Virus record (IMG/VR): IMGVR_UViG_3300034072_002211
Span: 186,001-250,000 of that record
Direction: 5' to 3' (one strand)
DNA length: 64,000 bases
Part shown: in pieces, positions 14,090 through 45,626 of the stretch
How positions within the stretch are numbered: the stretch's first letter is position 1
Layout of the letters: each line of letters begins with the position of its first letter
Program-made: the position numbers and the translations under genes
The notes under the pieces: model-generated
Told to the model about the DNA's origin: nothing
What the model saw: the letters and a program-made list of their open reading frames with translations, nothing else
The model's database searches: none

Positions 14090-15637
14090 TCAGCGATACT
14101 GCTTCATCCGCATCATCTTTTCGGCGAATCGCTTCTGCGATTCCATTTCCTGAACCATCGTCTTGCGGTGTTCCAGCTCACGCTGCTCATGTTCCTTTTT
14201 GATCTGGGCTTCCGTGGCTTTGCGCTGGCTCTCAAGCCGCTGCTCATAGAGCCACTGCTCTGCTTCTTCCTTGGTCGGGAAACCCCGCACGGTGTTGCCG
14301 TGCTCGACCATGAAGAAGTCACCCTGTTGTGAAGGACTGCGGCGGCACTTTACGCCGACTTTGGGTTTGCTACGCGGTGCTGGGACGCCCTTCTTCTGCT
14401 GGTAGGTTTCATAGTCGTCGGCGCTGTTGCTGAACTCCTCGAGCTCTGCGAGGATCTCATCCAGGATCATCTCCTTGGTCTTCTCGATATACTTGCGCCC
14501 AACCTCCTCAGGAAGCGCCGGGACGATCTCACCCTGCGTCACGTAGGCCGTGTAGAGCTCCTCATAAGCGGAGGAATCTCGTCGTGCCACAGTATAGCCC
14601 TGATTGCTATACTTGCGAGCACCGATGAACGAGTCCACCTCCTGCTGGGTGTGGAGGCCATAGACCACGCCGGTGTCCTTGAACAGTGCCAACCATTCGG
14701 GACGATTGCCACCCGGAGGACCCTGGAGTCCTTTGGTCGGCGGCGCCAGCAGGCTCTTGCCCACAACGTCTTCGTCCTGAATGCGCTGAAGCTGCGCCAT
14801 GATCTTGGGCTGGTAGTCTGCGGGCGGCGACCACCATTCCGGAGCCGGAGTGGGATCAGCAGTTGCGCCCATGGGGTTGAGCCAGAATGCTGTCCCGCCG
14901 CTCATCCAGTAGAGGTCGTTCTGTGCCCGCTGCATCTCCTCGGTCCAGAAGCTCTTAAGAGGAGCCGGCGGACCCTGCTCGATCAGCATCCGCGACACGC
15001 GCTGCTCCGAGGAGAGGATCATCTGAAGGGCGTTGTCGATTTCCTCTTCGCCCTTGCGGAACTCTTCGACGAACTTGGCCATTTTGTAGGACTTGATGGT
15101 GTCACCGTTGGTCCACGTCCAGACCAGCTTGCTCACAGTGGTCATCAGACCATCACGACCCAAGTTGATGTCCAGTTTCTCTTCGACAGTGGGCCGCATA
15201 TTATAGGCCGGGCTGGCCAGCTTCAGAGCAACGAGTTTCTCGCCTGCTCCCTTACAAGCCCTCAACTGCTCCAGCAGCTTCATTCCATTTTCGGTCAGCC
15301 AGTAGGTCCCACCGCCGTCAATATCGATGAGCTTGAGCTTGTGGCGAAGGTTCTTGATGGCCTCAATCTCATGGTTGGGCCAGTGAGAATCGCCCTCATA
15401 GTTGAGTTCCTGACGCGTCCGATGATCATTGTTGAGACGTGTCATCCTCGAGTCGAGGATCAGGTGGATCTGATACTGCGTCATGCCGCGCCCTTCAAGG
15501 GCCTTGACAGCCTTGTCCCAGCGTAGTCCACGAATCAGTTCGTGAAGGGGGCGGATGGTGTCAAGCTCACGCTTCAGTGAATCGGCGACTCCGAACAAAC
15601 CTTCCTCCTGGACCTGCTTGAGGTATTTGATTGCCAT
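14090..15637 (-). CDS. 515-aa hypothetical protein with C-terminal coiled coil
   Basis: long ORF after promoter element at 15640-15675. Confidence 0.85.
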   Translation of the reverse strand: MAIKYLKQVQEEGLFGVADSLKRELDTIRPLHELIRGLRWDKAVKALEGRGMTQYQIHLILDSRMTRLNNDHRTRQELNYEGDSHWPNHEIEAIKNLRHKLKLIDIDGGGTYWLTENGMKLLEQLRACKGAGEKLVALKLASPAYNMRPTVEEKLDINLGRDGLMTTVSKLVWTWTNGDTIKSYKMAKFVEEFRKGEEEIDNALQMILSSEQRVSRMLIEQGPPAPLKSFWTEEMQRAQNDLYWMSGGTAFWLNPMGATADPTPAPEWWSPPADYQPKIMAQLQRIQDEDVVGKSLLAPPTKGLQGPPGGNRPEWLALFKDTGVVYGLHTQQEVDSFIGARKYSNQGYTVARRDSSAYEELYTAYVTQGEIVPALPEEVGRKYIEKTKEMILDEILAELEEFSNSADDYETYQQKKGVPAPRSKPKVGVKCRRSPSQQGDFFMVEHGNTVRGFPTKEEAEQWLYEQRLESQRKATEAQIKKEHEQRELEHRKTMVQEMESQKRFAEKMMRMKQYR

Positions 15638-15667
15638 TCACCAGTCCTAGCAGAAACTGGTGTTACG

Positions 15668-16330
15668 TCAACCGAAAAACACCAGATCCAATCGGGGAAC
15701 CAAATCTTCATGCCCAATCGCGCGAATGAGCTCGATGACCTTGGCTTCAACGCCCTCATACTTGCTATGGAGGACGCTTACAACTTTTTCGCCGGTCACT
15801 GGTGCTTCTGTGAGACGCACAATGGCTTCTTCGGGAAACTCACAGACACCCGCTCGGCAGAGACTCCACGCTGCGCTGAGTAGCGCGCAGGTATGCTCCT
15901 CGCGGTCCTCGTAGACGTTCTTAAGCCCGATACGCTGTCCCTGTGGGGTCACATAGCTGAGAACTCGCTTGCCAGCCTTGCGAAAGGTATCCCAGGTCAG
16001 ACTGTCAGCGGGAAGACTGTGGATGATTGTTTCGGCTACTGGACCCAGCTTGCCTTCGAAGACCACATGATCGGGAGCCAGACCTCGCCGCAGAATACAG
16101 CGGATGAACTCTGTGACGTCGAGGGTGTTGGCCTCTACGTGGAGGTCGTCGATCAGAATAGCAGCCACGACCAATGAGTCGGCGGTGCTCCCACGATCCA
16201 GATACTCCTTCATGACGTTCAGGCTCTCGTCCTGTTCGTCACCGAAGATGCTATCAGCGTAGATGTGCGCGAATTCCACGAACATCGCGGGCCGAGGCAA
16301 GTTGGCGTTATCTGGTAGGTGACTTCCCAT
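15668..16330 (-). CDS. hypothetical protein, possible HUP/nucleotidyltransferase-fold (SCO2522-like)
   Basis: FVEFAHIY, ILIDDL, CALLSAAW..CRAG motifs; family match is from memory only. Confidence 0.6.
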   Translation of the reverse strand: MGSHLPDNANLPRPAMFVEFAHIYADSIFGDEQDESLNVMKEYLDRGSTADSLVVAAILIDDLHVEANTLDVTEFIRCILRRGLAPDHVVFEGKLGPVAETIIHSLPADSLTWDTFRKAGKRVLSYVTPQGQRIGLKNVYEDREEHTCALLSAAWSLCRAGVCEFPEEAIVRLTEAPVTGEKVVSVLHSKYEGVEAKVIELIRAIGHEDLVPRLDLVFFG

Positions 16331-16360
16331 ACGCTCTAGATAGCAAGATCTTGGTGAGCG

Positions 16361-16627
16361 TCAACCAGTTTGTGCGCCGCCCCAGGCAAGCTTGAACAAC
16401 ATGGCGTCATTGTCATCCTTGATGTAGAAGATCACGTTGCCAAAGTCAGGCTGAAACGTCCAGCTTCCTTTGATCATCTCGTTACACCAACGACCCGCAA
16501 GTCCACCATTGGGACTCTTGACACGGAAGGTGTGCCAGTCCTTGAAGCCAAGGGTGCTCTTGTTGCTGACTGGAAGGTTGCGCTTCAGCAACGTCTCCAG
16601 AGGACCAATGGGATCAGGTTGACTCAT
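16361..16627 (-). CDS. small phage protein, DAMLFKL family
   Basis: WCNEMIKGSW...FYIKDDNDAMLFKLAW; tandem paralogue. Confidence 0.75.
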   Translation of the reverse strand: MSQPDPIGPLETLLKRNLPVSNKSTLGFKDWHTFRVKSPNGGLAGRWCNEMIKGSWTFQPDFGNVIFYIKDDNDAMLFKLAWGGAQTG

Positions 16628-16872
16628 CGGAACTCCGGCTTGTCGGTGAACCATGTCAGCTTGAACAGCATGGCATCGTTCTTGTCCTCGATGTAGAAGG
16701 AGTGAAAGGTCATTGAGAGTGGTGGCTGATGTGCCCAACGACCCTTTATCATCTCCTCACACCAATCCAAGACATCCTGTCTGATGGGCACCTTGTGACC
16801 AGTACCCATGGTCTTGAAGCGGAAGATGTGCCACCCGATGACCTTCCCATCGGGATTAACCTTTGTGCCCAT
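16624..16872 (-). CDS. small phage protein, DAMLFKL family
   Basis: WCEEMIKGRW...FYIEDKNDAMLFKLTW. Confidence 0.75.
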   Translation of the reverse strand: MGTKVNPDGKVIGWHIFRFKTMGTGHKVPIRQDVLDWCEEMIKGRWAHQPPLSMTFHSFYIEDKNDAMLFKLTWFTDKPEFR

Positions 16873-17282
16873 CAGATTGCGCCATGCTCCCAGGCTTCGA
16901 TGGTGGGGAGGGGCGAACCCCGGCGATTGAACTCGGCCACGTGGGCGGCGGCTTCCTGCCGCTTGGCCTCTTCGGCCTGCCACTCCGCGTAGTCGCGCTT
17001 TTCTTTCTCGTCATAGTAGTGCATCCAGTTGCGATACTGGATACCGTCACGCTCCGAAACGCGGGCGAGAGCAGCGGCTTCCTCAGCTTCATTTTCCTCG
17101 AACGCTGCCTCGTAGGTGTCGAAGAAGCGGAGCATGTCCTCGGGCGAAGTGTTGAGGCTCGGACGGAAGCCGTGAAGCCCCTTGAAGAGGTCGCTGTAGG
17201 CGGACTGGAAGTCCTGCGTCAGCATGTCCGCGACAGTGAGGGTGCGCTCAGTGCCGGTTCCATCCACATACTGCAGGCCCAT
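16872..17282 (-). CDS. hypothetical phage protein
   Basis: start reassigned to MGLQYV after AGGAGATCG. Confidence 0.8.
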   Translation of the reverse strand: MGLQYVDGTGTERTLTVADMLTQDFQSAYSDLFKGLHGFRPSLNTSPEDMLRFFDTYEAAFEENEAEEAAALARVSERDGIQYRNWMHYYDEKEKRDYAEWQAEEAKRQEAAAHVAEFNRRGSPLPTIEAWEHGAI

Positions 17283-17307
17283 CTTCGATCTCCTCGTTGC
17301 GTTACTT

Positions 17308-17347
17308 GTCCTGTTTAGCAGAACTGGTGAGGGTGTCAACCAGTTTT
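17308..17347 (-). promoter_or_regulatory. repeated early-promoter/hairpin element
   Basis: GTCCTGTTTAGCAGAACTGGTGA..GTCAACCAGTTTT. Confidence 0.8.
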
Positions 17348-19070
17348 AGGAGAAAAGATGCGGCTCCAAGAGGCATCCAACATGCCAGTGGCAGAACTCC
17401 TCCATGAGGGTGTCCTTCTCAAATCCCAGGTAGCTTGCGAACTCCTGGAAGCCCAGGTCGCAATGCCGGATCTTGATGTCAGTGTTCTTGAAGAAGCGCA
17501 CGTTGGCTTGCCAGATGATCCGGCTGATCTCAAGCTCTGCGGCCGCTGGGATCTTTGCGCGAGCGCGCAGGCTCACGTAGGGCGCAGCATAGGGAACGCG
17601 GGCCTTGGCTCCACTACCCAGGATAACGCTGAGCCCGCCATAGTCGGAGCCAACAATGAAGTCCCGGAGGTCCACCACGTCATAGTATTCAGTGCCCGCA
17701 TAGTCACCGAAGTCGCTGAGGATGACCTGATCGACGATCTTCACGCCTTGGGGCAAGAGATCCAAAGCTGAACGGATAGTACCGCCGGTCACCGTGTCAT
17801 CTTCGACCAGCACATATTCACCATCAGGAATGTTCTGCGCCTGCTCCTCGAGAAAAGGAAAACCCACGCGCTCAGCACGGAACTGTGGCTTCCGTTGGGC
17901 TTCACTGACTGCGAAGTAACGGGTGCTCTGAAACATCTCATCACCGGGGAAGAACGGATCCAGGCTGAGAGTTAGGCGGTCACCAACGACCTTCTCAGCT
18001 TGTGCGAGCTGTTCGCTCACTGGAATGAGGTGGACCTTGTTCTGATGGCCGAGACTTTTGAACACCTGTGCGATACCAAGTCGAACCGTGCTCTGGAGTT
18101 GGATCCTGCGCTTCTCGAGTTCGCTTTCATCAATGATGCTGTGCCAGCGACGAATCGCGAGGTTCTCTTCATTGCGGATCAGGTAGGGCAGTTCGCCCGT
18201 GTCCTGCTTGTCCCAGGTCAACAGGTAGTCGCGGACCTTGGTGTTCAGATGGTCATGATTGCCTTCGCGCGCCAACTTGCTCGAGATGTCGCTCCGCGGG
18301 ATCATGATCGACTGGCCGGGAAGAGCCTCACCAAAGCCTTCGTTATCGGAACCGTAGACGTAGAAGACCCGCAGATATTGACCAACATGGAACTTGAGGT
18401 ATTCCTGGAGCCGCATGACCACATCGGTGAAGTTGATCTCGGCGGGCATGTAACGGGCCGCCCAGGGGTCACAGTCCAGCCAGTTGCTCTCTTGCGTGGC
18501 CAGCTCAACCATCGAGCAACGATGCTCTGCGGGGATGGCAGCGGTGCCACCATACTTCTGCCCCACATAGCTGTCGTGACCGGGCGCAAAGTATCCACCC
18601 AGAACGCTGTAACCCTGATCTTCTGCGATCTTGCGCGCCTCGTCCATCATTGCGATGTGGCCGTTGTGGATGGGAGCCATGCCGCCCGTGGTCACTAGCA
18701 CAATGGGCTCACGGCTGCGATCGGACTTCAGCCATGCGATGAAATGCTTGCGGACCTTCTCCAGTGGAGTGGTCATGAAGACAGGATCCCAAGCCTTGTG
18801 CGACATCGCGAGCTGGGGCAAGCCGTCGTCGAAGAAGCCCGCGCGGTAGAGATCCTTGCTGTCCTGAGTCTTCTCATAAACCCGACGGTAGCAGGGATCC
18901 GCGAGAGCTTTCCAGGCATACCGCTGGGCGGTGCTCATGCCCTCCTCCAAAAGCCTACGGCCTGCGAGGTGGATGTCATTGTGTCCACTCAACGGTTCAA
19001 GCCCGAGGAGCTCATAGAGATTCTCCTTGGGACGATCCATTGTGATACCGCAGGCGTAGGTGTCTGTCAT
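17346..19070 (-). CDS. J-domain-like + NMN/NaMN adenylyltransferase + type I phosphoribosyltransferase fusion
   Basis: NLYELLGL...ALADPCYRRVYE; TGGMAPIHNGH (HxGH), FYVYGSD; VLVEDDTVTGGT PRPP-binding loop. Confidence 0.8.
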   Translation of the reverse strand: MTDTYACGITMDRPKENLYELLGLEPLSGHNDIHLAGRRLLEEGMSTAQRYAWKALADPCYRRVYEKTQDSKDLYRAGFFDDGLPQLAMSHKAWDPVFMTTPLEKVRKHFIAWLKSDRSREPIVLVTTGGMAPIHNGHIAMMDEARKIAEDQGYSVLGGYFAPGHDSYVGQKYGGTAAIPAEHRCSMVELATQESNWLDCDPWAARYMPAEINFTDVVMRLQEYLKFHVGQYLRVFYVYGSDNEGFGEALPGQSIMIPRSDISSKLAREGNHDHLNTKVRDYLLTWDKQDTGELPYLIRNEENLAIRRWHSIIDESELEKRRIQLQSTVRLGIAQVFKSLGHQNKVHLIPVSEQLAQAEKVVGDRLTLSLDPFFPGDEMFQSTRYFAVSEAQRKPQFRAERVGFPFLEEQAQNIPDGEYVLVEDDTVTGGTIRSALDLLPQGVKIVDQVILSDFGDYAGTEYYDVVDLRDFIVGSDYGGLSVILGSGAKARVPYAAPYVSLRARAKIPAAAELEISRIIWQANVRFFKNTDIKIRHCDLGFQEFASYLGFEKDTLMEEFCHWHVGCLLEPHLFS

Positions 19071-19108
19071 GTCACCTCTTTGCTACCAAATTGGTGACGC
19101 GTCAACCG

Positions 19109-19507
19109 TTAAAGGTCGAACAGACTCCTGCCGTAGGGGCACTCGATCATGGGTTCTGTGGGACGGACGCCGGCGCTCTGGAGCGCAGCATTCTTGTTCC
19201 TCGCGGCCTCTGCTCGTTCGGCGAGTTCATACGCCTTGCTGTTGAGCTCATGGACCTCACGCGCCGTCAGCCGCCCGTCATTGAGCGCCTTAGCCACGTC
19301 CATTTTGAGGGCCGGACACTTGCCCGAGTCGTAGTCGCTCGTTGGACCGACCTTGGCAGCATCCTCGTATTGGTTGGGGGTAGCTTCTGCGTTTGGACGC
19401 ACGATCCAGTTGGGCAGCGCATACCAGACGCAATAGAGGATGCCGAGGATCAGCACGAGCGTGGTCAGCCACTTGATGGCGTGCCAGCGATTGTAGGGCT
19501 TGCTCAT
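19109..19507 (-). CDS. membrane-anchored periplasmic protein
   Basis: N-terminal TM helix; start MSKPYN. Confidence 0.7.
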   Translation of the reverse strand: MSKPYNRWHAIKWLTTLVLILGILYCVWYALPNWIVRPNAEATPNQYEDAAKVGPTSDYDSGKCPALKMDVAKALNDGRLTAREVHELNSKAYELAERAEAARNKNAALQSAGVRPTEPMIECPYGRSLFDL

Positions 19508-19743
19508 TGGATCGCCTTGATCATCAGCTCGTAGATGCGAGCCTGTGGAGTGTTGGGATACTGGCCGGGAACGAACAGACCGCAGCGACCAGTGGTATGG
19601 CACATCGCAGCCCAGAGAGCTTCATTGAGGCGCTCATTGGATTCCTGCCGCTCCTCGGCCGTTGGGTTCCAGCCTGCCCCACCGGCGCGCATCTGAGCGT
19701 AGATGGTCGCGAGTTCTTCGCGCTCTTGTGGGGTCAGGCTCAT
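19504..19743 (-). CDS. hypothetical protein
   Basis: ATGA overlaps. Confidence 0.7.
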   Translation of the reverse strand: MSLTPQEREELATIYAQMRAGGAGWNPTAEERQESNERLNEALWAAMCHTTGRCGLFVPGQYPNTPQARIYELMIKAIQ

Positions 19744-19937
19744 CGTTTACCTTTCAGACGACCGATCTCGCGACGAATACGCCGCTTGCTGGGCCGCGCG
19801 CCATAGTTGAAATCACGCTGGGCCCAATAGAGGATCCAGCCCATAGTCTCGCGACGACTGGGCCGACGAACGAGGACAACCCGTGGTTTGTTTCGCACAC
19901 CCTTGGGTCTACGATATTGCCACCACCAGATATTCAC
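19740..19937 (-). CDS. small Arg-rich protein
   Basis: GTGA overlap start. Confidence 0.55.
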   Translation of the reverse strand: MNIWWWQYRRPKGVRNKPRVVLVRRPSRRETMGWILYWAQRDFNYGARPSKRRIRREIGRLKGKR

Positions 19938-20233
19938 GCCTTGCTCCTCACGATCTTGCCCTTGGGGGTGAGAGTCAGGCGAAGGCCCATGTGCCGCTGG
20001 ACGCATTGTGTGATGCCGATGTCGTCCAACATGCGAATCTTGCTCCGACCAGGATAGTTGCTATCCGTGCCCCAATGGATGAGGCCCGCACGATATAGCC
20101 TGTCGATCCTGTTCGCAAGATCAGGACCCCAGCGACGGATGTGGAGACCCTTCCGGAGAGAAACCCTCCGGAAGAGCGCCATGTCACGCGGGCTGATCAC
20201 CCGATCACCTTGCGGCCATCGTTGTAGGTCCAC
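19934..20233 (-). CDS. basic hypothetical protein, possible winged-helix
   Basis: IDRLYRAGLI...LTLTPKG pattern. Confidence 0.6.
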   Translation of the reverse strand: MDLQRWPQGDRVISPRDMALFRRVSLRKGLHIRRWGPDLANRIDRLYRAGLIHWGTDSNYPGRSKIRMLDDIGITQCVQRHMGLRLTLTPKGKIVRSKA

Positions 20234-20487
20234 AGCGGCGCGACCGCCTTGCGGATCTCCATGATGCGATCGGCGAACTCGATCGGGAGGCCGGTGTTGC
20301 CCACGATGTCGTGGACATCACAGCCGTCGGTCAGATCGCAGAGAGCGTTGATGAGTTCCTGGACGGACACGCCGGTGCCGCCGGCTGCGAGCGTGTCAGC
20401 GGTCATGACTTCGTGACGGTTGGCCAGGCTGGCAGCAACCTTGATATCGAGACCGTATGTCTCGTTGCGCGCGTCGAGCGTCAGCAT
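20197..20487 (-). CDS. hypothetical phage protein
   Basis: AGGAGA RBS before MLTL; promoter element. Confidence 0.75.
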   Translation of the reverse strand: MLTLDARNETYGLDIKVAASLANRHEVMTADTLAAGGTGVSVQELINALCDLTDGCDVHDIVGNTGLPIEFADRIMEIRKAVAPLWTYNDGRKVIG

Positions 20488-20550
20488 TTTCTGTCTCCTT
20501 TTCCTGTTTACCAACTCTGGATAACAGAAAATAGGATAGCGTCAACCAGT

Positions 20551-20793
20551 TTATAGGCCCACAGGTATCACCGCGTGGCTGCGACACTTGCGGCAGAGAC
20601 GGCCTTCCCTCGGCTTGTTGAGCCAGCCTTCAGGAGGCGGCTTCCACTCGGGAACCCAGCCACATTCCTGACACTTCCACGACGGTGGGACCGTGTCAAA
20701 TTCCCAGTCGTCATCCTCGGGCGTCGATGATCTCACAGGCTTTCTCGTTATACATATGGACGTCTCCCCATATCTCAACGCTTCGCCAGCCAA
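20551..20793 (-). CDS. small Zn-ribbon protein (start uncertain)
   Basis: CQECG and CRKCRS pairs. Confidence 0.55.
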   Translation of the reverse strand: MAGEALRYGETSICITRKPVRSSTPEDDDWEFDTVPPSWKCQECGWVPEWKPPPEGWLNKPREGRLCRKCRSHAVIPVGL

Positions 20794-21058
20794 GACGTTG
20801 CAGGAACGCCTTAAGGTGCGGGTTGTGGGGATGCTCGACCTCGAGCGGAAGCTTGGGCGACCACTCTTTGAGGAAGCGAGTCAGATAACCTTTGCGCTCA
20901 GTTGACGCCTTGATATTGGCGAGCACAATGACGCCCGGATAGCGCACGGAGCGCCTACAGTAGATCACGAGCCCGTAGGCGCGCACATACTCGGACCGCA
21001 TACGAGCGGCGCCCTCAGGGCTTTCGAGGGCATATTCCTCAAACTTCCGATAGCACAT
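20711..21058 (-). CDS. hypothetical protein, possible GNAT-like fold
   Basis: LANIKASTERKGYLTRFL resembles acetyl-CoA motif A. Confidence 0.6.
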   Translation of the reverse strand: MCYRKFEEYALESPEGAARMRSEYVRAYGLVIYCRRSVRYPGVIVLANIKASTERKGYLTRFLKEWSPKLPLEVEHPHNPHLKAFLQRLGWRSVEIWGDVHMYNEKACEIIDARG

Positions 21059-21443
21059 CTCGTTCCTTACGCCAGATCAGTTCCTTGGGGTTCCAGTAGG
21101 CGGGTTCAAAGAACCCTTCCTCTGGGCCGAGACCGTAGAAGCCGCGCGCATGAAGCGTGGCGAGCTCGAGGTCTGCGATGCTCGTGCGATAGTCGGGTGC
21201 CTCGTTCATGGTGAACACGAACTCATGGGCTGTGACGAAAAGACCCTCGGGAATATCGACACCGCCGATGGAGATGCGCTGACCCAGCTCGTTGCGGGCA
21301 TTGAGGGAGAAGCCGGTCCCGCCCATTTCCACACGATCAGCGATCATGCGAAGCATACGGACGATGTGACCCAGCTGATCCCCGCCAACCGCGTCCACGA
21401 GCTCGCTGCGGACCGTGAAGTCGATCCTGACTTGTTCAACCAT
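21039..21443 (-). CDS. hypothetical phage protein
   Basis: operonic ORF. Confidence 0.7.
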   Translation of the reverse strand: MVEQVRIDFTVRSELVDAVGGDQLGHIVRMLRMIADRVEMGGTGFSLNARNELGQRISIGGVDIPEGLFVTAHEFVFTMNEAPDYRTSIADLELATLHARGFYGLGPEEGFFEPAYWNPKELIWRKERDVLSEV

Positions 21444-27725: not shown

Positions 27726-28505
27726 TTATGCCCTCTCGAATACGATATCAGTGCGGATGATGATCTTCTCCTTGTCCCACTCCTGAGAGCCCTGCTGGAA
27801 GGGCTCCCCATCGTGAAGCAGCCGATGGTCGAACAATAGCGCATGACCAGCGCGTGGCTTGTTGGCGAAGATGACTTCGTCATCGTGACCTGCTCGGTCC
27901 CAATCACTGAAGTCCATTTCGTCCATACGCTTGCCGACTTGTGGATCCCTGAGGAAGCGTGTGGCCCCATACTCGTTGGTCGTCAGGTAGATGACCAGGC
28001 TCATGAGGGTCCGCTGGGTCTCTGTCTTGGCATAGGTGCCATCATAGTGGGCGACCAGCTGTCCGCCATCCTCATAGCGGATAAAGCGCATCAGCGGATT
28101 GACGCCAATAGGCCGCCAGAGGCTGTGGTTGTCGTGGTCCGTGGGCGTGAATGGGTCACAGACTCGCACGTCGGGAAGGAAGGGCTTGAGGCGCCGCCAG
28201 AGGACGTCTGCGAAGGCTTCGTTGAAATTGCTCAGACGGAAGTTGCCGATCTGCTCATAGGGCTTGTTCGCGTAACCGTCCAGTCCTACCGCCTGCCATG
28301 CGTTGCGACGGAGCCCGTCGAGCAGAACGCTGACGATGCTCGGTGGGAGCAAGTTGCTCGCTGTGAAAGCCTTGGCACCATTCTCGAGGTCATGAGCCTT
28401 GTACGACCACACGGGATCGCAGAGGTAGTCGCCGCCGAAATACCCAGCAGAGATAATCTTGTTGGCGTAGTCCGAATAGTCGAAAGAGTTGACGAATCCG
28501 CTCAT
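27726..28505 (-). CDS. 2OG-Fe(II) oxygenase (prolyl-4-hydroxylase-like)
   Basis: RFIRY..G...AHYDG (HxD), distal LLHDG His, IIRTD Arg. Confidence 0.85.
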   Translation of the reverse strand: MSGFVNSFDYSDYANKIISAGYFGGDYLCDPVWSYKAHDLENGAKAFTASNLLPPSIVSVLLDGLRRNAWQAVGLDGYANKPYEQIGNFRLSNFNEAFADVLWRRLKPFLPDVRVCDPFTPTDHDNHSLWRPIGVNPLMRFIRYEDGGQLVAHYDGTYAKTETQRTLMSLVIYLTTNEYGATRFLRDPQVGKRMDEMDFSDWDRAGHDDEVIFANKPRAGHALLFDHRLLHDGEPFQQGSQEWDKEKIIIRTDIVFERA

Positions 28506-29500
28506 GCTGCCCTCCAGGCCGGGTTATCCCAACCACCCTTAACACCAGCTTGCATGACGTCAAGATGGACAGCGGGCGACCGCCCCAGATACTTGTGCGC
28601 GTTGTAGCGATGCATCCGCTCCAAGTTGCCCACGTATTCGTCATATTGACGATAGTCATCCTCGCTGCCCTTTTCGTCGAGGATTTGATCGACCATGATG
28701 CGGGCATTGGTATGCCACTTCATGTGCGTGAACAACTCCACGAAATCGTAGGGCGCACCGAAGACGACCTCATCCGTGGTCGCGTCGAACATATCACCCG
28801 TGGGCGCACGTTCCAGCACCTCGCGCGGCACGCCGAGGAACTCGCCGATCGCATAGACCTCGGACTTGAACATATCGCTGATCAGCTGGAGATCGACCAT
28901 ACCGTCGCTGGCCTTGCCGAAATAACCCAGGTAACCACCCTCGCTGAGGTTGGTCGTGCCGATGACCAGGCCGGGCTGACCCTGACCGGCCAGGACGCTG
29001 GTGATGTAATAATAGGTCGGAGTGCGGGCGTAGCTGGTGACCTGTCCGCGGCACCAGTAATACTTCTCCTCGACCGCCGATCCCAGCACGGCCTCCACGC
29101 TGTTGATGATTGCCTCGCTGATCGGGGAGATGTCGATCTCCAGCGGGTTGACTGCGAATGCCTCGCAGACTTGCTTGGCCAGATTGGCCGCCTTGGTCTG
29201 CCCCGTTACGCCGAGGTTGGTGTGATCAGGCATGGTGACTGCCACGATACGCTCGATAGGCGAACCCGGTTCCTGCTGAGCCCGTGCGACCAGACCGAGA
29301 ACCACAGCACTGTCGATGCCGCCGGAAACCGCGACCACTGCGCTCTTGAGCCCGCTCTGTCTGTAATAGTCGTTGAGCAGCTTGACCTTGGCCTCAACGA
29401 CTCGCTCTACGTTGAAGCCTCGCTGAAGCCGACACATCTCAAGGGCCTCCTTGAGTGGCTGAGACATCTGCATGTTCGTTGCGTGATTACGAATTTCCAT
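28502..29500 (-). CDS. nadE: NH3-dependent NAD+ synthetase
   Basis: VAVSGGIDSAVV PP-loop, GTTNLSEG..GYFGK.SDG, DMFKSEVY..GEFLGVP...L.RAPT. Confidence 0.9.
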   Translation of the reverse strand: MEIRNHATNMQMSQPLKEALEMCRLQRGFNVERVVEAKVKLLNDYYRQSGLKSAVVAVSGGIDSAVVLGLVARAQQEPGSPIERIVAVTMPDHTNLGVTGQTKAANLAKQVCEAFAVNPLEIDISPISEAIINSVEAVLGSAVEEKYYWCRGQVTSYARTPTYYYITSVLAGQGQPGLVIGTTNLSEGGYLGYFGKASDGMVDLQLISDMFKSEVYAIGEFLGVPREVLERAPTGDMFDATTDEVVFGAPYDFVELFTHMKWHTNARIMVDQILDEKGSEDDYRQYDEYVGNLERMHRYNAHKYLGRSPAVHLDVMQAGVKGGWDNPAWRAA

Positions 29501-29511
29501 GTTGCTATTCC

Positions 29512-29718
29512 TTAGCAGGTGGACTGGAGGACGACCGAACCATCTGCCCGTTCGCAAAGGACGACGCTGACCATGTGAGCCTGGCTCTTGCGCGGCTTGA
29601 AATGCTCGGTAGCCTTGACCTTGGCCTGGTAAAGCGATGAAGCGTAGAGCTCAATCTGCTTGCCGTTGAAAAAACCCATGTAACCGCAGTCGCCGGGGGT
29701 CTTTTCGTTAATTGTCAT
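29512..29718 (-). CDS. small phage protein
   Basis: AGGAGATCG RBS and promoter element. Confidence 0.75.
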   Translation of the reverse strand: MTINEKTPGDCGYMGFFNGKQIELYASSLYQAKVKATEHFKPRKSQAHMVSVVLCERADGSVVLQSTC

Positions 29719-39634: not shown

Positions 39635-41329
39635 CTAAGCGTCAACCTGTTCGTATTGACGTAACAGCGCAATGGTGTTTCTGAGCCCGTAAGCCACTGT
39701 GAAAGCACCGAAACGTGGCCCATCGCTTGAACCCAAGAGACATTCGTAGAGAGCTTGGAACCATGACCGCAACGGCTCAAACTCATGCTTCTTGCCGACC
39801 TCATAGACCTGATACTGATAATGCTCGGCGGTCATGTTTTCGAGCATCAGAGAGAAACGGGTCGCAAGCTCACTGAATGCTGCCCGCTCCTTCTCGGTGG
39901 GTTCTCGGCGAGAACGCTCAAACAGCCCCTTGTCGGTTGCGTAGGCGATGACCTTGGGAGCCATTTCCCGCGCATAAGCCGCGGTCGCGTCGGCGAACTC
40001 ACGACCCTGCATCAAGTAAGCGAGCAGGTTCTCTGGCTGCTTGGCCTGAGCCACAACAGCCAAGTTGAGCATGAGTCCATGGGAGATGTCAGAGCTCAGT
40101 GGCTCAGGCAATTCCACGCGGAAGTGCCACGTGGCGTCATCGGGCGTCGTCTCAGCCTTCTGCCGCAACTTGACATACTGGTCTTCCAGCTGGGGCACGA
40201 TCTCTCTGTAGAGCTTCTTTGCCGCGCGTGGGTTCTGAAACATGAACAGCATCAGGGAGCCAGTCGACCCATAGGTCAACCACTGCTCGACCGTAAAGCC
40301 GTTGCCCTTGCTCTTGCTGATCTTTGCGCCGTTTTCGTCCAGGAACAGTTCATAGGTCAGGTTGAGCGGAGGGGTTCCGCCGAGGATCCGACAGATCTGG
40401 TTGGAAGCCTTGACGCTGTCAATGAGGTCCTTGCCAGACATCTCATAGTCCACGTCAAAGTAGACCCAGCGCATCGCCCAGTCGACCTTCCACTGAAGCT
40501 TGGCATTGCCGTTGTGGCTCATCTGGCCACAGTGCTCACCGTCGTCCGTGACCCAGCCGATGTATCCACGTGCGCCAGTTGCCTCGGCCTTGACCTGCAG
40601 AACAGGGCCCTTGCCACACCAACGCGGCATAAACGGACTGTAGGTCGCCTTGCGATCATCCCCCAGCGTGGCGAGCATGATCTCCTGAATCTTGTCGAAG
40701 TTGTCCCAGACGCGGTTCAGCATCTCGTTGAACTTGCCGGACTTGTAATAGCGCGAGGAGCTCACAAAGCTCACAGTGCTGCGGTCGGGCGATGCTCCCA
40801 CTTGGCCGCCATTGTAGTCCTTGAGGATGCGATCCACAAACTCGCAGAGCTTGTCGTTGTTGGCTTCGGCAAAGGTCATGGGATCAACCATGACTTGCGT
40901 GACACCCGGATCGTTGGAATAGGGCGAAGGAACCTCACTGAGCGGCAGGCCCAGATACTCGTTCATCCACTCGGGCATGTCGTCAGGGACCTTACGCATT
41001 GCGTCATAGTCATCCGAGAACATGATCAGACGGGTCTTGTAGGCGTTCTGCGTGAGCTCATTGAAAGCGCGCATCACCCAGAGGGTGCGGACCACCTCAC
41101 CAAAGGTGCCGATATGCGGAGCGCCCGAGGGACCATAGCCGGTCTCAAAGGTCACCACATCACCAGGCTTCTTGCCCTTCTTCTCGATATGAGCGAGAAG
41201 GCTGCGGGCCTCCTGGAAGGGCCAAGACTTTGCCTGGTCGAAAATGGTAGCCTCCTTTGCCTGCTCTGCTTTGATGGCACGGATCCGCTCGATGAGGGCT
41301 TCCTCTTCCCAGCGGTTCATCATAGCCAT
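39635..41329 (-). CDS. lysS: class I lysyl-tRNA synthetase
   Basis: TGYGPSG.PHIGT, KLQWKVDWAMRW, EMSGKDL, KISKSKGN, GPRFG. Confidence 0.95.
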   Translation of the reverse strand: MAMMNRWEEEALIERIRAIKAEQAKEATIFDQAKSWPFQEARSLLAHIEKKGKKPGDVVTFETGYGPSGAPHIGTFGEVVRTLWVMRAFNELTQNAYKTRLIMFSDDYDAMRKVPDDMPEWMNEYLGLPLSEVPSPYSNDPGVTQVMVDPMTFAEANNDKLCEFVDRILKDYNGGQVGASPDRSTVSFVSSSRYYKSGKFNEMLNRVWDNFDKIQEIMLATLGDDRKATYSPFMPRWCGKGPVLQVKAEATGARGYIGWVTDDGEHCGQMSHNGNAKLQWKVDWAMRWVYFDVDYEMSGKDLIDSVKASNQICRILGGTPPLNLTYELFLDENGAKISKSKGNGFTVEQWLTYGSTGSLMLFMFQNPRAAKKLYREIVPQLEDQYVKLRQKAETTPDDATWHFRVELPEPLSSDISHGLMLNLAVVAQAKQPENLLAYLMQGREFADATAAYAREMAPKVIAYATDKGLFERSRREPTEKERAAFSELATRFSLMLENMTAEHYQYQVYEVGKKHEFEPLRSWFQALYECLLGSSDGPRFGAFTVAYGLRNTIALLRQYEQVDA

Positions 41330-41858: not shown

Positions 41859-42314
41859 TCAACCTAAAACCTGAACTCTTTTCTTGCCCCGCTTCATGCG
41901 CTTCTTGAGCACCTTGTTGACCAGCTCATGGTCAGGCTTTTGGCGCAGCGCCTTGGGGTCGAGGTTCAGGTCAGGCCACTTGTCCACCTTGCGCTCCATC
42001 TGTCGAGCGGTGCGCTTCAAATAGCCACGAGCCACGATGATGGTGCGATTATATTCCGCAATGCTCTTATAGTTGCGGCGAACATTCTCGGGATCGGGCT
42101 TTGCGTTGGGGAAACGAAGCCGCCTTTCCTCTGACTGATGAGTGTAGGTGCGATCCTTCTCCAAGCGGTCAAAATACCGCTTCATGGAAAAGTGCTCAGC
42201 AAGCTTCTGCATCATGGCCATGACCTTGGCCTGAGCATTCTCAACGCCAGCTTCGTTTAGCGCCTCGATGATCAGAAGTGGATTGCAGTAAATCTGGTGT
42301 AGCGTGGGGCGCAT
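41859..42314 (-). CDS. basic hypothetical protein
   Basis: TAATG coupling. Confidence 0.65.
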   Translation of the reverse strand: MRPTLHQIYCNPLLIIEALNEAGVENAQAKVMAMMQKLAEHFSMKRYFDRLEKDRTYTHQSEERRLRFPNAKPDPENVRRNYKSIAEYNRTIIVARGYLKRTARQMERKVDKWPDLNLDPKALRQKPDHELVNKVLKKRMKRGKKRVQVLG

Positions 42315-42610
42315 TACTCAACTCGGGTCAGGATGCCAAAGACATTCTTTCGAGGAGTCCACCCATTCACATGACCATGGTTGTTGGAGATCTGATATTG
42401 ATCAGGCCTCACACCGGTCACGAGATGTAGGTATTGAGCACCGCGCACCTTACAGAGCACGATGTCACCCTTCTGTGGATCTCGATCTAGTGGTGCGATA
42501 GTGCAGAGTTGGCCTGACGAGATCCTTCCCGTCATGCTATTGCCCTTGGGCCGACACTGGACCGTCTTGCCTTCTTGAAGTTCTTTGATAAGATGTGTGG
42601 CCCAACTCAT
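42314..42610 (-). CDS. S24/S26 peptidase-like single domain
   Basis: GNSM...I..G, GDIVL, YLHLV. Confidence 0.7.
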   Translation of the reverse strand: MSWATHLIKELQEGKTVQCRPKGNSMTGRISSGQLCTIAPLDRDPQKGDIVLCKVRGAQYLHLVTGVRPDQYQISNNHGHVNGWTPRKNVFGILTRVE

Positions 42611-42750
42611 AGATCCACGTTACAGATCCTTGTCTGTCTTGTCAACTTTGGATCGGGAGACATCTTTGGCTCTCACCTGTAATCCTTTTTATTGAGGAAC
42701 CGTAACCAGATTCTGTATAAAGGTGGTTAGATATCACAGACGGAAACCAT

Positions 42751-43683
42751 ATGCTCGTTGCACCAAAGCAACTCGACACTAGCAAAGACATAAAGATGAA
42801 AGGAGGAAAGATCCTCCTGGTTTCTGGTGATGTCTTGACCCCTAGTCTAAGCTTCACGGATGATCCGTCGACTGGCTTCTACAAAACGTCGTCTGTTGCT
42901 TTGGGATATGCTTATCAAGGGAACAGCATTCTAAGCATTGGAACCAACGGGGTCACCAGTGGTTCGTTCAGCGGCTCACTGAGTGGTAATGCTTCCACTT
43001 CAACCAAGTTGGCCACTCCTCGGACCCTAACTTGGTCTGGTGATGCGAGTGGATCACTGACCTTCGATGGTTCAGCAAATGCTACCGCTACCCTTACTTT
43101 GGCTAATTCTGGCGTGGCCGCTGGCACATATTCTACCGTCACTGTAGATGCTAAGGGACGGGTCACTGGCGGCTCAAAGTCTGCCTATCGTTCCTCAATT
43201 TTATTTGCTGGTAACTTCTTCTCTCCCAACAATACAGATTGGGTTTGTCCCAATCTGGCTCCTGCTAGTGCGGATCCGGCCTCTCCTTCTTTGAACGTGA
43301 GAGCATTTGATGACACCATGGAGACAGGTGTTGGATTCTACCAATATATCCCACCACTGGCTACCACGCTGACGTTGGTCATCAAGGCTCGTCCTACAAC
43401 CAATCCTAGTAGTTCTACCAAGTCAGTTATGCGCCTCTATCATAGAGCAATTCCGGATGGCACGGCCATGCCAGCGTGGTCTGCTCCTATTCAGCTAACT
43501 GACTTGAGCTTCCCGTCTGGCGTGAATTATTATAAGACCTTCACCCAGACAATATCATTGGCTTCAGGCGGATGGGCCCCAGGGAACACCTATTTGTTTG
43601 AACTAACTCGTTTTGGCAGTTCAACAGCTGATACTTTGCTGGGAGATCTTTTGATCATTGAAGTTCAGGCTATTTGGTCATGA
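42751..43683 (+). CDS. tail fibre / receptor-binding protein
   Basis: LSGNASTSTKLATPRT..SGDASGS..FDGSAN and SGVAAGTYSTVTVDAKGRVT fibre motifs; low GC. Confidence 0.8.
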   Translation: MLVAPKQLDTSKDIKMKGGKILLVSGDVLTPSLSFTDDPSTGFYKTSSVALGYAYQGNSILSIGTNGVTSGSFSGSLSGNASTSTKLATPRTLTWSGDASGSLTFDGSANATATLTLANSGVAAGTYSTVTVDAKGRVTGGSKSAYRSSILFAGNFFSPNNTDWVCPNLAPASADPASPSLNVRAFDDTMETGVGFYQYIPPLATTLTLVIKARPTTNPSSSTKSVMRLYHRAIPDGTAMPAWSAPIQLTDLSFPSGVNYYKTFTQTISLASGGWAPGNTYLFELTRFGSSTADTLLGDLLIIEVQAIWS

Positions 43684-44384
43684 CGGTTCTTTTCAATGGC
43701 AGCAATCAATATCTAACTCTGGATACCTCTAGTATTCTAGACTTGAGAGATTTCACGCTGACTTGTTGGATTAATCAAGCCACTGTCACATCGAGCACTA
43801 GGGTTGTTTTTGCCAGCAATTCAGCAGAAAACAACTATCAAGCGCCAATAGCTTTTTACATCCAGAACGGTCGACTAGGCCTCCAGATTACCAGGACTAG
43901 AACTATCCTTTGGTTTTGGACTATTACAGAAACGGATACTCTTCTGGGTAATGCTACGATCCCTGTGAATCACTGGACCCATGTTGCTGCGTCATATGAC
44001 GGTAATACGATGAGAGTTTTCGTAGATGGTGTGCCTGACGGAAGTCTGGTATCTGGTTACCAGCCAATAACAGGCAACATCAATGCTACCGTGGGGGCAG
44101 ACTTGACAGGGTCTTCTTCGGCGCAGGGTTTTTGGAGTGGCCAGCTGGCTGACTTCCGTCTTTATAATCGAGAGCTACATCCTGGGGAGATCAAGACCAT
44201 TGCCACTTTGGGTGGGGCTGATGAGATCCTCTATGGACTCCGGGGACGCTGGGGAATGAATGAAGGGGTAGCTAACTCTACGGTGTCTTCTGGCGTTCTA
44301 GATTACAGTATCAACAGAAACAAGGCAAACGCAAGAAACAATCCCAAGTTTCTTCCTGGTGTCTACGCGAATGGTGAGGACTAA
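43680..44384 (+). CDS. LamG/concanavalin-A-like lectin domain protein
   Basis: FNGSNQYL, FTLTCWI, WTHVAASYDG...FVDG, F.G.LADFRLYNR.L. Confidence 0.85.
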   Translation: MTVLFNGSNQYLTLDTSSILDLRDFTLTCWINQATVTSSTRVVFASNSAENNYQAPIAFYIQNGRLGLQITRTRTILWFWTITETDTLLGNATIPVNHWTHVAASYDGNTMRVFVDGVPDGSLVSGYQPITGNINATVGADLTGSSSAQGFWSGQLADFRLYNRELHPGEIKTIATLGGADEILYGLRGRWGMNEGVANSTVSSGVLDYSINRNKANARNNPKFLPGVYANGED

Positions 44385-44962
44385 TGGCTGCAGTATTCAA
44401 CCGAACGACAAAACAATACCTGATATCAGTTAACACTCCAGATTATAGCCCAAGTGAGTGGTTGATTAACCCTGACATCACTCCAGTTCGAGGCCATGAT
44501 CCTCGAGTCTGGGTCATCAATCCGGATGACACTTTGCGGCTCATGACCGATGCTGAAATGGATGCTGAGTTCCTAGAGGGATATAAGCTCACATGGTCTA
44601 ACAAGGTCAATGAACACCGGGAACGAGTTATTGGTAATGGTATGTGGTATATGGGTTATCTCTTTGATACTGATAATACTGCTCGAGACAATATCGTGGC
44701 AACAGTGAGCGCAATCAATGCGGGCATGGTGTTGCCTCCTGATTTTGTGTGGCGTGATGGATCAAATCACAACGTGCCTATGACTGCCCAGCAGGTAACA
44801 ACTATGGGTATTATGATGCTAGGTTACATCAATCAGATTTATGCTCATTCCTGGACTCTGAAGGCTCAGATCTCTGCTTGCGCTACTCGTGCGGAAGTCA
44901 GGGCTATTGACGTCACACTGGGCTGGCCTTCCAACAACGTAGACGGTTCGCAACCTACTTGA
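44384..44962 (+). CDS. tail fibre assembly protein (DUF4376-like)
   Basis: FDTD...RDNI, WRDGSNHNVPMT, H...LKAQI, IDVTLGWP. Confidence 0.7.
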   Translation: MAAVFNRTTKQYLISVNTPDYSPSEWLINPDITPVRGHDPRVWVINPDDTLRLMTDAEMDAEFLEGYKLTWSNKVNEHRERVIGNGMWYMGYLFDTDNTARDNIVATVSAINAGMVLPPDFVWRDGSNHNVPMTAQQVTTMGIMMLGYINQIYAHSWTLKAQISACATRAEVRAIDVTLGWPSNNVDGSQPT

Positions 44963-45001
44963 CTGTCAATAAATATGGCTGGATCCTAATGGAGAACAGC
45001 C

Positions 45002-45538: not shown

Positions 45539-45626
45539 GAGAAACAGCTTCTCCCATCCCGCCAGTTTTTCTATGGGCTCAGGAAGTCTCATGCTGCGAA
45601 GTTTTGCGACGCAGCATGAGGTCCAG

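What the first reader, a model, noticed from the sequence alone, without database searches (positions are those of the whole stretch)
17346..19070. Three-domain J-like/NMNAT/type-I PRTase fusion: candidate new NAD-reconstitution enzyme
Seen in sequence: an N-terminal DnaJ-like helix pattern without a clear HPD, a HxGH adenylyltransferase with eukaryote-NMNAT-like features (HR..MVELA..ESNW...DPW; YGSD), and a PRTase loop VEDDTVTGGT. Established knowledge: phage NARP1 (Adps + Namat) and NARP2 (Nampt + Nmnat) rebuild NAD+ after Thoeris, DSR2 or SIR2-HerA attack, while canonical PncB/Nampt are type II PRTases. Inference: a single polypeptide coupling a type I PRTase to adenylylation would be a different route. 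Together with NadE it points to a deamidated (NaMN to NaAD to NAD) bypass.
Basis: partly seen in the sequence, partly recalled or inferred. Interest (0 to 1): 0.75.

Follow-up and report, generated by a model that had tools for sequence, protein, structure and literature searches.

The report
NAD-building fusion enzyme in huge phage
A huge bacteriophage encodes a three-part enzyme (a J-domain without its active loop, an NAD-type adenylyltransferase and a divergent phosphoribosyltransferase-like domain) whose gene lies next to, near or fused with a dedicated NAD synthase gene in phages and bacteria, so it is probably the core of an undescribed self-contained NAD-making module.

Summary
ORF 17346-19070 (-), 574 aa, has three domains:
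- a J-domain homologue whose HPD loop is deleted;
- an intact eukaryote-type NMNAT domain;
- a divergent type I PRTase-like domain with a canonical PRPP loop.

The family is not phage-specific: at least 1,200 clusters occur across CPR bacteria, gut Bacillota, Proteobacteria, Actinomycetota and huge phages.

The strongest evidence is the link to a dedicated NadE paralogue. Its gene lies beside the fusion gene in all 45 cellular or metagenomic loci examined, and 9-13 kb away in the phage clade. NadE, a 2OG-Fe(II) oxygenase, NMNAT and the PRT-like domain are joined into single 1,130-1,430 aa proteins in many lineages.

Eight MAGs carry this module and no other recognisable NAD gene. Elsewhere NadA or PncB sits in the same operon.

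The best reading is a compact deamido route: base plus PRPP gives NaMN, then NaAD, then NAD. The window's phage also encodes a canonical Prs; its relatives do not.

Three points remain open: whether the PRT-like domain is catalytic, what the always-associated oxygenase (or radical SAM/PLP enzymes in anaerobes) does, and whether the phage uses the module against NADase defences. I found no description of it in the literature.

The parts
17346..19070 (-). Whole gene: J-like / NMNAT / type I PRT-like fusion protein, 574 aa plus stop
   Evidence: ORF list and translation. There are 71 full-length homologues at 29-68% identity. The AlphaFold2 model has pLDDT 93 and pTM 0.92.
18735..19070 (-). N-terminal domain (res 1-112). 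It holds J-domain-like helices (res ~14-76) with the HPD loop deleted, followed by the invariant AGFFDDG linker (res 77-83, 18822-18842).
   Evidence: Profile A3 matches PDB J-domains at E 1.7e-5, and HPD lies in a query gap. A77, G78 and F79 are invariant in 38 sequences.
18195..18734 (-). NMNAT (NaMN/NMN adenylyltransferase) domain, res 113-292
   Evidence: Pfam PF01467. Profile A5 matches Arabidopsis NMNAT 9rpk at E 5e-26 over its full length. Foldseek top hits are eukaryotic NMNATs.
18657..18686 (-). GGMAPIHNGH: the (T/H)xGH ATP-binding signature of class I nucleotidyltransferases
   Evidence: G129, P133, H135, G137 and H138 are invariant.
18267..18287 (-). ISSKLAR: the ISSTxxR-type second ATP motif of the NMNAT/NadD family
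   Evidence: S264 and R268 are invariant and S263 is nearly so. The motif aligns to ISSSRLR and ISSTKIR of plant and human NMNAT.
17349..18194 (-). C-terminal divergent type I PRTase-like domain, res 293-574
   Evidence: The AF2 model has pLDDT 96. VIA-align gives 25 matches at Z 5.0-7.0; 24 are type I PRTase-fold proteins and the top one (7f06) is untitled. The Foldseek top hits are also type I PRTases but weak, with E >= 0.015. No Pfam family reaches its cut-off.
17778..17816 (-). PRPP-binding loop YVLVEDDTVTGGT
   Evidence: It aligns to the PRPP loop of human and E. coli APRT. D424 and D425 are invariant in 140 diverse members; G429 and T431 are in at least 90%.
17646..17681 (-). Family signature DVVDLRDFIVGS. 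It resembles the APRT PPi loop (GLDSRGFLFG) but lies after the PRPP loop.
   Evidence: It served as the search pattern that recovered the family. D467 is invariant; D464, R469, D470 and F471 are in at least 90%. The alignment to the APRT PPi loop is sub-threshold.
28502..29557 (-). Dedicated NadE paralogue (NH3-type NAD synthase, PP-loop SGGIDS). The true start is probably the ATG at residue 20.
   Evidence: Pfam and NCBIfam. PP-loop. It is adjacent to the fusion gene in 45 of 45 non-viral loci. It lies 9-13 kb away in the four complete relatives. It shares only 28% identity with the canonical phage NadE.
27726..28505 (-). 2OG-Fe(II) oxygenase. Its start overlaps the NadE stop by 4 nt, and it is fused to NadE in many lineages.
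   Evidence: Pfam PF13640. H153-x-D155, H227, H231 and R251 are invariant in 15 of 15 sequences. NadE-2OG fusions of 589 aa and four-domain fusions exist.

Best explanation
The gene encodes the central enzyme of a compact, dedicated NAD-synthesis module.

Proposed steps:
1. The C-terminal type I PRT-like domain binds PRPP and joins it to a pyridine carboxylate (nicotinate, possibly quinolinate) to give NaMN. This step is inferred.
2. The NMNAT domain adenylylates NaMN to NaAD. This rests on strong homology but has not been assayed.
3. The module's own NadE paralogue amidates NaAD to NAD+. This rests on homology plus conserved linkage.

The J-like domain cannot stimulate Hsp70 because it has no HPD. 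It most likely serves as a structural or docking element. The phage also encodes a canonical PRPP synthase that can supply PRPP.

In the huge phage the module probably keeps NAD+ available during infection, including after host NADase defences fire. This last point is inferred and untested. The co-conserved 2OG-Fe(II) oxygenase is part of the module, but its step is unknown.
For: - NMNAT identity.
- PRPP loop and PRT core.
- NadE linkage: the gene is adjacent in all 45 cellular or metagenomic loci. It lies 9-13 kb away, syntenic, in the four at-least-90%-complete phage relatives.
- Rosetta-stone fusions: NadE-2OG-NMNAT-PRT proteins of 1,131-1,429 aa, plus NadE-NMNAT-PRT and 2OG-NMNAT-PRT forms.
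- Operon links to NAD chemistry: NadA-racemase-NadE-2OG-fusion in a Gaiellaceae MAG that lacks a bona fide NadC. A PncB-type gene lies directly upstream in a gammaproteobacterial MAG.
- Module-only genomes: eight MAGs (two CPR, six gut Bacillota) have the module but no NadA, NadC, PncB/Nampt, other NadD/NadM/NadR or second NadE.
- PRPP supply: the phage has a canonical Prs, E 1.8e-109 to 3dah.
- NadE and the oxygenase keep their catalytic motifs.
Against: - No enzyme assay exists.
- The PRT-like domain is only remotely similar to catalytic PRTases: Pfam is below cut-off, Foldseek E >= 0.015 and Z <= 7.
- The non-catalytic PRT-fold regulators PurR and PyrR are among the structural hits.
- No type I PRTase is known for pyridine bases.
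- PncB co-occurs with the module in one operon (L043), in Saccharibacteria, and in a separate canonical cluster in the complete phage relatives. The PRT-like domain is therefore not obviously needed for NaMN there.
- The NMNAT domain lacks the Trp-bearing insert that stacks on the pyridine ring in plant and human NMNAT.
- The obligate oxygenase or radical-SAM partner is unexplained.
- 27 of 39 host genomes also have a canonical NadE.
- The MAG absences may reflect incompleteness.
Confidence: 0.5

Rival explanations
1. The protein is only an NMNAT. Its PRT-like domain would be a non-catalytic PRPP or nucleotide sensor, or a scaffold as in PurR and PyrR. That domain would gate adenylyltransferase activity or dock NadE. 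NaMN would come from ordinary PncB, NadC or the host.
For: - A PncB-type gene lies in the same operon in L043.
- A canonical PncB cluster is present in all four at-least-90%-complete phage relatives.
- PncB is present in the Saccharibacteria MAG.
- The structural match to catalytic PRTases is weak, and PurR (1o57) and PyrR are among the hits.
- The domain also occurs fused to a HAD phosphatase and as a stand-alone protein.
Against: - The catalytic-type acidic pair D424/D425 is invariant, together with a set of (near-)invariant Arg and Asp residues: R299, R384, R401, D464, D467, R469, D470, R491, R504.
- Eight MAGs have the module but no type II PRTase of any kind.
- A Gaiellaceae operon has NadA but no bona fide NadC.
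Confidence: 0.2
2. The module does not make NAD itself. It would make a modified or alternative pyridine (or other carboxy-heterocycle) adenine dinucleotide. The oxygenase (aerobes, phages) or the PLP and radical-SAM enzymes (anaerobes) would make or tailor the base. The PRT-like domain would ribosylate it, NMNAT adenylylate it, and NadE amidate it. Possible products include an NADase-resistant cofactor analogue or a signalling nucleotide.
For: - An oxidising partner is nearly constant, with an intact catalytic triad.
- 2OG oxygenase loci and radical SAM loci split by lineage.
- Some Bacillota members carry an extra GNAT domain.
- The pyridine-stacking Trp insert is deleted.
- The module coexists with a complete canonical Preiss-Handler cluster in the same phage genomes, and with canonical NadD/NadE in most host genomes.
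- The module NadE shares only 28% identity with the canonical phage NadE.
Against: - The eight module-only MAGs would then have no recognisable way to make NAD.
- Minimal two-gene versions (NadE + fusion) exist without any oxidase (L040, L041).
- The direct operon links are to NadA and PncB, which are enzymes of ordinary NAD precursors.
Confidence: 0.2
3. The middle domain is a generic cytidylyl- or adenylyltransferase acting on a sugar phosphate or a cofactor other than a pyridine nucleotide. The PHROG hit suggests a heptose-1-phosphate adenylyltransferase. The proximity to NadE would be coincidental.
For: The only PHROG hit is phrog_7878, E 0.088. Weak Pfam and NCBIfam hits to pantoate ligase and FAD synthetase cover the HxGH region.
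Against: - Family-specific NMNAT similarity extends over the whole domain at E 5e-26.
- NMNAT and NadD occupy the first 42 Foldseek ranks.
- NadE adjacency in 45 of 45 loci and covalent fusions rule out coincidence.
Confidence: 0.03

Closest known systems
Eukaryote-type NMNAT (Arabidopsis NMNAT 9rpk, human NMNAT1/3), and more distantly bacterial NadD
   Same: Same fold and both ATP motifs, the PxxDxYxxK mononucleotide-phosphate motif and the DPW motif. The profile E is 5e-26 and these are the top structural hits.
   Different: It sits between a J-like and a PRT-like domain. It lacks the roughly 10-residue Trp-bearing insert of the pyridine pocket. It falls below the NadD equivalog cut-off, at 33 bits against 112.
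Bacterial Preiss-Handler pathway (PncB, NadD, NadE)
   Same: The proposed chemistry and the last two enzymes are the same, and the NadE partner is conserved. PncB or NadA occur in the same operon in some genomes.
   Different: The PRT step would be done by a type I fold rather than the type II PncB. Two steps are fused in one chain. A 2OG oxygenase, or radical SAM and PLP enzymes, is an extra constant partner.
NARP2 of vibriophages (Nampt + Nmnat, amidated route; Osterman et al., preprint 10.1101/2024.02.11.579819, summarised in PMC13728456)
   Same: It is phage-encoded, uses a PRPP-dependent PRT step followed by adenylylation, and has the presumed purpose of restoring NAD+.
   Different: NARP2 uses a type II Nampt and needs no NadE. 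Here no PF04095 gene is present in the 277-kb record. The route is deamidated, and the family is mostly cellular.
NARP1 (Adps + Namat) and NARP3 (PnuC + NadR-like; PMC13464706)
   Same: These are phage NAD+ reconstitution systems. NARP1 uses a PRPP-synthase-like enzyme, and NARP3 uses a bifunctional NMNAT fusion.
   Different: The phage Prs here is a canonical ribose-phosphate pyrophosphokinase (E 1.8e-109 to 3dah), and there is no Namat. The fusion partner is PRT-like rather than a ribosylnicotinamide kinase, and no PnuC link was seen.
Type I PRTases (OPRT, APRT, HGPRT) and the PRT-fold regulators PurR and PyrR
   Same: It has a PRPP loop with an acidic pair and a TGxT phosphate grip. The five-stranded core superposes at Z 5-7.
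   Different: About 170 of the 282 residues are family-specific. The putative PPi-loop-like motif follows the PRPP loop instead of preceding it. No known type I enzyme uses a pyridine base.

Membership tests
NMNAT / NadD nucleotidyltransferases (PF01467, TIGR00482) | (T/H)xGH motif at the first beta-alpha turn | tested here: met
   PIHNGH is at residues 133-138. H135, G137 and H138 are invariant in 38 members.
NMNAT / NadD nucleotidyltransferases (PF01467, TIGR00482) | ISSTxxR second ATP motif | tested here: met
   ISSKLAR is at residues 262-268 and aligns to the plant and human motif.
NMNAT / NadD nucleotidyltransferases (PF01467, TIGR00482) | Significant family-level sequence and fold similarity | tested here: met
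   The profile E is 5e-26 to 9rpk. Foldseek gives E 2e-8 to 9iw1. The NadD equivalog model is below cut-off, at 33.2 bits against 112.45.
NMNAT / NadD nucleotidyltransferases (PF01467, TIGR00482) | Aromatic (Trp) residue stacking on the pyridine ring, in the insert after the GxD motif. The residue's role is from my own knowledge of NMNAT and NadD structures. | tested here: not met
   The plant segment containing the Trp is an insertion relative to the family profile, so it is deleted here. Whether another aromatic such as F79, F80 or F246 replaces it could not be tested.
Type I phosphoribosyltransferases (PF00156) | PRPP-binding loop: hydrophobic strand, acidic pair, then TGxT | tested here: met
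   VLVEDDTVTGGT. D424 and D425 are invariant in 140 members.
Type I phosphoribosyltransferases (PF00156) | Pfam gathering score | tested here: not met
   13.8-15.6 bits against a cut-off of 26.3. Only 8 of 38 members hit at E < 1.
Type I phosphoribosyltransferases (PF00156) | Five-stranded PRT core fold | tested here: inconclusive
   The 25 VIA-align matches at Z 5.0-7.0 are, apart from one untitled entry, type I PRTase-fold proteins, over about 85-120 residues. Z below 8 is in the range of common arrangements, and Foldseek gives E >= 0.015.
Type I phosphoribosyltransferases (PF00156) | PPi loop and catalytic transfer of a base to PRPP | not testable with these tools
   There is only a sub-threshold resemblance of DVVDLRDFxxG to the APRT PPi loop, in permuted order. 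An assay is needed.
J-domain (DnaJ/Hsp40) proteins | Helix II-III hairpin similarity | tested here: met
   The profile E is 1.7e-5 to DnaJ J-domains.
J-domain (DnaJ/Hsp40) proteins | HPD tripeptide needed to stimulate Hsp70 | tested here: not met
   The HPD segment of DnaJ aligns to a gap, and no HPD occurs in the consensus. The domain is therefore J-like and not a functional J-domain.
NARP2 (phage Nampt + Nmnat) | Type II nicotinamide PRTase encoded by the phage | tested here: not met
   There is no PF04095 match in the 277-kb record. The relatives carry PncB (nicotinate type, NF003704 433 bits), not Nampt.
NARP1 (Adps + Namat) | Prs-like ADPR pyrophosphokinase together with a Nampt-like Namat | tested here: not met
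   The Prs is canonical and no Namat or PF04095 gene is present.
Any NAD+ reconstitution counter-defence | Rescue of phage or of NAD+ levels from NADase defence systems | not testable with these tools
   This needs co-expression and infection experiments.

The most novel reading that the evidence does not exclude
The module would be a complete, previously unrecognised route to NAD. A type I PRT-fold domain would replace the type II enzymes NadC and PncB. The constant oxidising partners would make or unmask the pyridine carboxylate from an amino-acid-derived precursor. These partners are the 2OG oxygenase (with or without the Asp/Glu-racemase-like enzyme) in aerobes and phages, and the fold-type-III PLP enzyme plus radical SAM enzymes in anaerobic Bacillota. 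This would amount to a third way to the nicotinate ring. Huge phages would carry it as a host-independent NAD supply.
Probability: 0.15. Interest if true: 0.9.

Novelty: new variant of a known kind. Interest (0 to 1): 0.7.

Why it matters
NAD supply is a central battlefield between phages and NAD-depleting defences such as Thoeris, DSR2, SIR2-HerA and aRES. Three phage reconstitution pathways have been described so far.

This module would add a fourth logic: a deamidated route with a dedicated NadE and a fused PRT-NMNAT enzyme. It would also show that huge phages borrowed it from, or share it with, bacteria.

Independently of phages, the family is large and unannotated, with at least 1,200 clusters at 50% identity. 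It is the only recognisable NAD machinery in several CPR and small-genome gut Bacillota MAGs. It could therefore fill a gap in metabolic reconstructions of those organisms.

If the PRT-like domain is catalytic, it would be the first type I PRTase for a pyridine base. The oxygenase versus radical SAM alternation hints at an unknown chemical step attached to NAD synthesis.

Tried and rejected
- GenBank phages: tblastn of the whole protein and of residues 113-574 against 50,697 records gave no match.
- PHROGs: only one insignificant hit.
- Neighbouring ORFs 14090-21443: Pfam found nothing informative.
- Complex prediction for the fusion protein with NadE: no answer. This counts neither for nor against binding.
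- Literature: searches for NARP pathways, NadE in phages, NMNAT-PRT fusions, NAD synthase with 2OG oxygenase, and alternative NAD pathways with radical SAM found no description of this family. Searching the survey of viral NAD systems (PMC9503650) for NadE, NMNAT, 2OG and DnaJ found none of these terms.
- Presence/absence cross-tabulation in Patescibacteria: abandoned, because only 3 of 301 sampled genomes carry the family.
- Natural replacement of the PRT-like domain by PncB in L043: rejected. The domain is present there in a second reading frame.
- Racemase-like partner in the phage record: none found.
- Sugar-nucleotide transferase reading: rejected (see rivals).
Full report
**1. The object**

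ORF 17346-19070 on the minus strand encodes 574 aa. It lies in a long run of minus-strand, mostly unannotatable genes at about 56% GC. The window belongs to an IMG/VR virus record of 277 kb that was cut from a 468,011-bp contig.

The closest relatives of the gene, at 55-63% identity, sit in huge phages of 416-465 kb. Two of these are bounded by direct terminal repeats. They form a clade with the window at 100/100 support. Like other huge phages, this genome encodes aminoacyl-tRNA synthetases, namely LysRS and SerRS.

**2. Anatomy**

AlphaFold2 models built on a 38-sequence alignment are confident. The whole protein has pLDDT 93 and pTM 0.92, and the C-terminal domain alone has pLDDT 96.

*Residues ~14-76: J-like domain.* These are homologous to DnaJ J-domains (profile E 1.7e-5). 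The HPD-bearing loop is missing throughout the family. The domain is therefore J-like, but it cannot act as an Hsp70 co-chaperone in the canonical way. An invariant AGFF(D)DG segment follows it.

*Residues 113-292: NMNAT domain.*
- Both ATP motifs are present.
- The best sequence and fold matches are Arabidopsis, human and fungal NMNATs, ahead of bacterial NadD.
- One difference matters. The short insert that carries the pyridine-stacking Trp in plant and human enzymes is deleted in this family.

*Residues 293-574: PRT-like domain.*
- No Pfam model captures it.
- Its profile finds the PRPP loop of adenine PRTases at E 7e-4.
- The acidic pair D424/D425 is invariant in 140 diverse members.
- An exhaustive structural comparison gives 25 matches at Z 5.0-7.0: one untitled entry (7f06) and 24 type I PRTase-fold proteins. 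They include OPRT, HGPRT, APRT, Prs and PurR, and they cover the core only. Foldseek agrees in kind but weakly.
- About 170 residues are family-specific. These include the signature DVVDLRDFxxG, which faintly recalls the APRT PPi loop but lies after the PRPP loop rather than before it.

**3. The family and its partners**

The word-indexed search found 71 full-length homologues. The exhaustive profile search with the C-domain found 1,204 clusters at 50% identity, 547 of them at E < 1e-30.

A scan of one genome per prokaryotic species recovered 39 loci. Most are in gut Clostridia and Bacilli MAGs. Others are in five CPR lineages, Proteobacteria (including the isolate Variovorax sp. WDL1) and a Gaiellaceae MAG. 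The family is sporadic, present in only 3 of 301 sampled Patescibacteria. No GenBank phage has it.

In every one of the 45 cellular or metagenomic loci, a NadE paralogue lies beside the gene. In the phage clade it lies 9-13 kb upstream, in conserved synteny. This NadE passes NCBI's nadE model and keeps the PP-loop. It shares only 28% identity with the canonical NadE found in related phages.

Two architectures exist.
- **Type A** occurs in the window, other phages, CPR, Proteobacteria and Actinomycetota. NadE is fused or adjacent to a 2OG-Fe(II) oxygenase whose facial triad and 2OG-binding Arg are invariant. In cellular genomes an Asp/Glu-racemase-superfamily gene usually precedes it.
It has a fold-type-III PLP enzyme and a 290-aa radical SAM protein upstream of NadE. 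A second radical SAM protein and a 592-aa unknown often lie downstream.

A few loci have only NadE plus the fusion gene (L040, L041).

Many lineages encode NadE, oxygenase, NMNAT and the PRT-like domain as one polypeptide of 1,131-1,429 aa. NadE-NMNAT-PRT and 2OG-NMNAT-PRT forms also occur. These fusions, together with universal adjacency, show that the proteins act in one process.

**4. Which process**

Several observations point to NAD itself.
- The NMNAT and NadE assignments are the last two steps of the deamidated route.
- In a Gaiellaceae MAG the operon reads NadA - racemase-like - NadE - 2OG - fusion, with overlapping stops and starts. That genome has no bona fide NadC.
- In a 1.1-Mb gammaproteobacterial MAG a PncB-type gene lies directly upstream of the module.
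- 34 of the 39 host genomes lack NadA and 35 lack NadC.
- Eight MAGs (two CPR, six Bacillota) carry the module but lack every other marker tested: NadA, NadC, PncB/Nampt, another NadD, NadM or NadR-type NMNAT, and a second NadE. Subject to MAG incompleteness, the module is their only visible NAD machinery. That would require the PRT-like domain, or an unknown importer, to provide the mononucleotide.
- The window's phage also has a canonical PRPP synthase 68 kb away.

**5. What does not fit simple salvage**

- The four complete or near-complete phage relatives carry a second, canonical cluster about 200 kb from the module: NadE2 - PncB (433 bits) - Nudix - NadM-type NMNAT. That cluster is absent from the 277 kb of this phage that are held, but it may lie in the missing 190 kb.
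- Most host bacteria also keep a canonical NadE, together with either NadD or a NadM-type NMNAT.
- PncB coexists with the PRT-like domain in one operon.
- The oxidising partner is nearly universal yet has no role in the textbook pathway.
- The pyridine-stacking insert is missing.

These facts keep two rivals alive. In one, the PRT-like domain is regulatory. In the other, the module makes or processes something slightly different from the standard intermediates.

The alternation between a 2OG oxygenase and radical SAM plus PLP enzymes follows lineage: Bacillota against the rest. I read this as an aerobic/anaerobic substitution because of what those enzyme classes require, but that is my inference and was not tested. 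If correct, it suggests a real chemical step, perhaps formation or unmasking of the base.

**6. Verdict**

It needs three corrections. The enzyme belongs to a broad cellular family rather than being a phage novelty. It is one part of a three- to six-gene module that includes an oxygenase. A counter-defence role is only an inference from context and from the published NARP1-3 precedents.

I put about 0.5 on the full PRT to NMNAT to NadE mechanism. I put about 0.8 on the narrower statement that the protein is the NaMN/NMN adenylyltransferase of a dedicated NadE-coupled NAD module.

Noticed in passing
whole window; G000 (277,444 bp) against the source contig (468,011 bp): IMG/VR classes the record as a provirus cut from a 468-kb contig. 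Its closest relatives are DTR-bounded phages of 435,856 and 462,455 bp, so the contig is probably a whole huge-phage genome and the trimming is likely wrong.
   Followed up: partly
L060:4741-8745 (G307, a 435-kb relative): The four at-least-90%-complete relatives each carry a PncB-family gene far from the module. In G307, the one examined, it lies in a canonical cluster: NadE (331 aa), PncB (437 aa), a 113-aa ORF, Nudix (225 aa) and a NadM-type NMNAT (201 aa). G307 therefore has two NadE and two NMNAT genes.
   Followed up: partly
window 39635-41329 (-); L059:385-1746 (-); L059:12803-13735 (-); L059:8608-9297 (-): The phage encodes a class I lysyl-tRNA synthetase, a seryl-tRNA synthetase, a canonical PRPP synthase (very close to proteobacterial Prs) and a Bax1-I family membrane protein. 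No tRNA genes occur in the window.
   Followed up: partly
window ~42000-46000: A low-GC island (0.485-0.49 against about 0.56) coincides with a block of plus-strand ORFs (42751-45538) inside an otherwise minus-strand region. It may be an inserted element. The largest ORF has no Pfam hit.
   Followed up: no
window 16361-16738 and 16624-16983 (-): Two small ORFs just downstream of the fusion gene overlap by 115 nt at their ends. They encode clearly paralogous 119-125 aa proteins with a shared C-terminal motif (MIKGxW..QP...FYIxDxNDAMLFKLxW) and no family hit.
   Followed up: no
L004, L006 and L009-L047 (Bacillota clade): A conserved six-gene operon occurs in gut Clostridia and Bacilli MAGs. Its order is PLP decarboxylase-like, a 290-aa radical SAM protein, NadE, the fusion (sometimes with a C-terminal GNAT), a 364-aa SPASM-like radical SAM protein and a 592-aa unknown protein.
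   Followed up: partly
L039:3348-4253 (-) (Variovorax sp. WDL1): A Mom-family (phage Mu DNA-modification) gene lies 2 kb from the module. This suggests that the module sits in a phage-derived region in this isolate.
   Followed up: no
L003 (NCBI GCA_036704275.1, 745-kb contig); P0017 (958-kb contig): Homologues lie on very long contigs. The 745-kb one, the only one inspected, is dense in small same-strand hypothetical genes. These may be exceptionally large phages or plasmids.
   Followed up: no
ESM Atlas: The PRT-like domain also occurs fused to a HAD (Hydrolase_3) phosphatase in CPR proteins of about 611 aa, and as stand-alone proteins of about 330 aa. A separate viral family of 488 aa (755 members) combines CTP_transf_like with a weaker structural match to this domain.
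   Followed up: no
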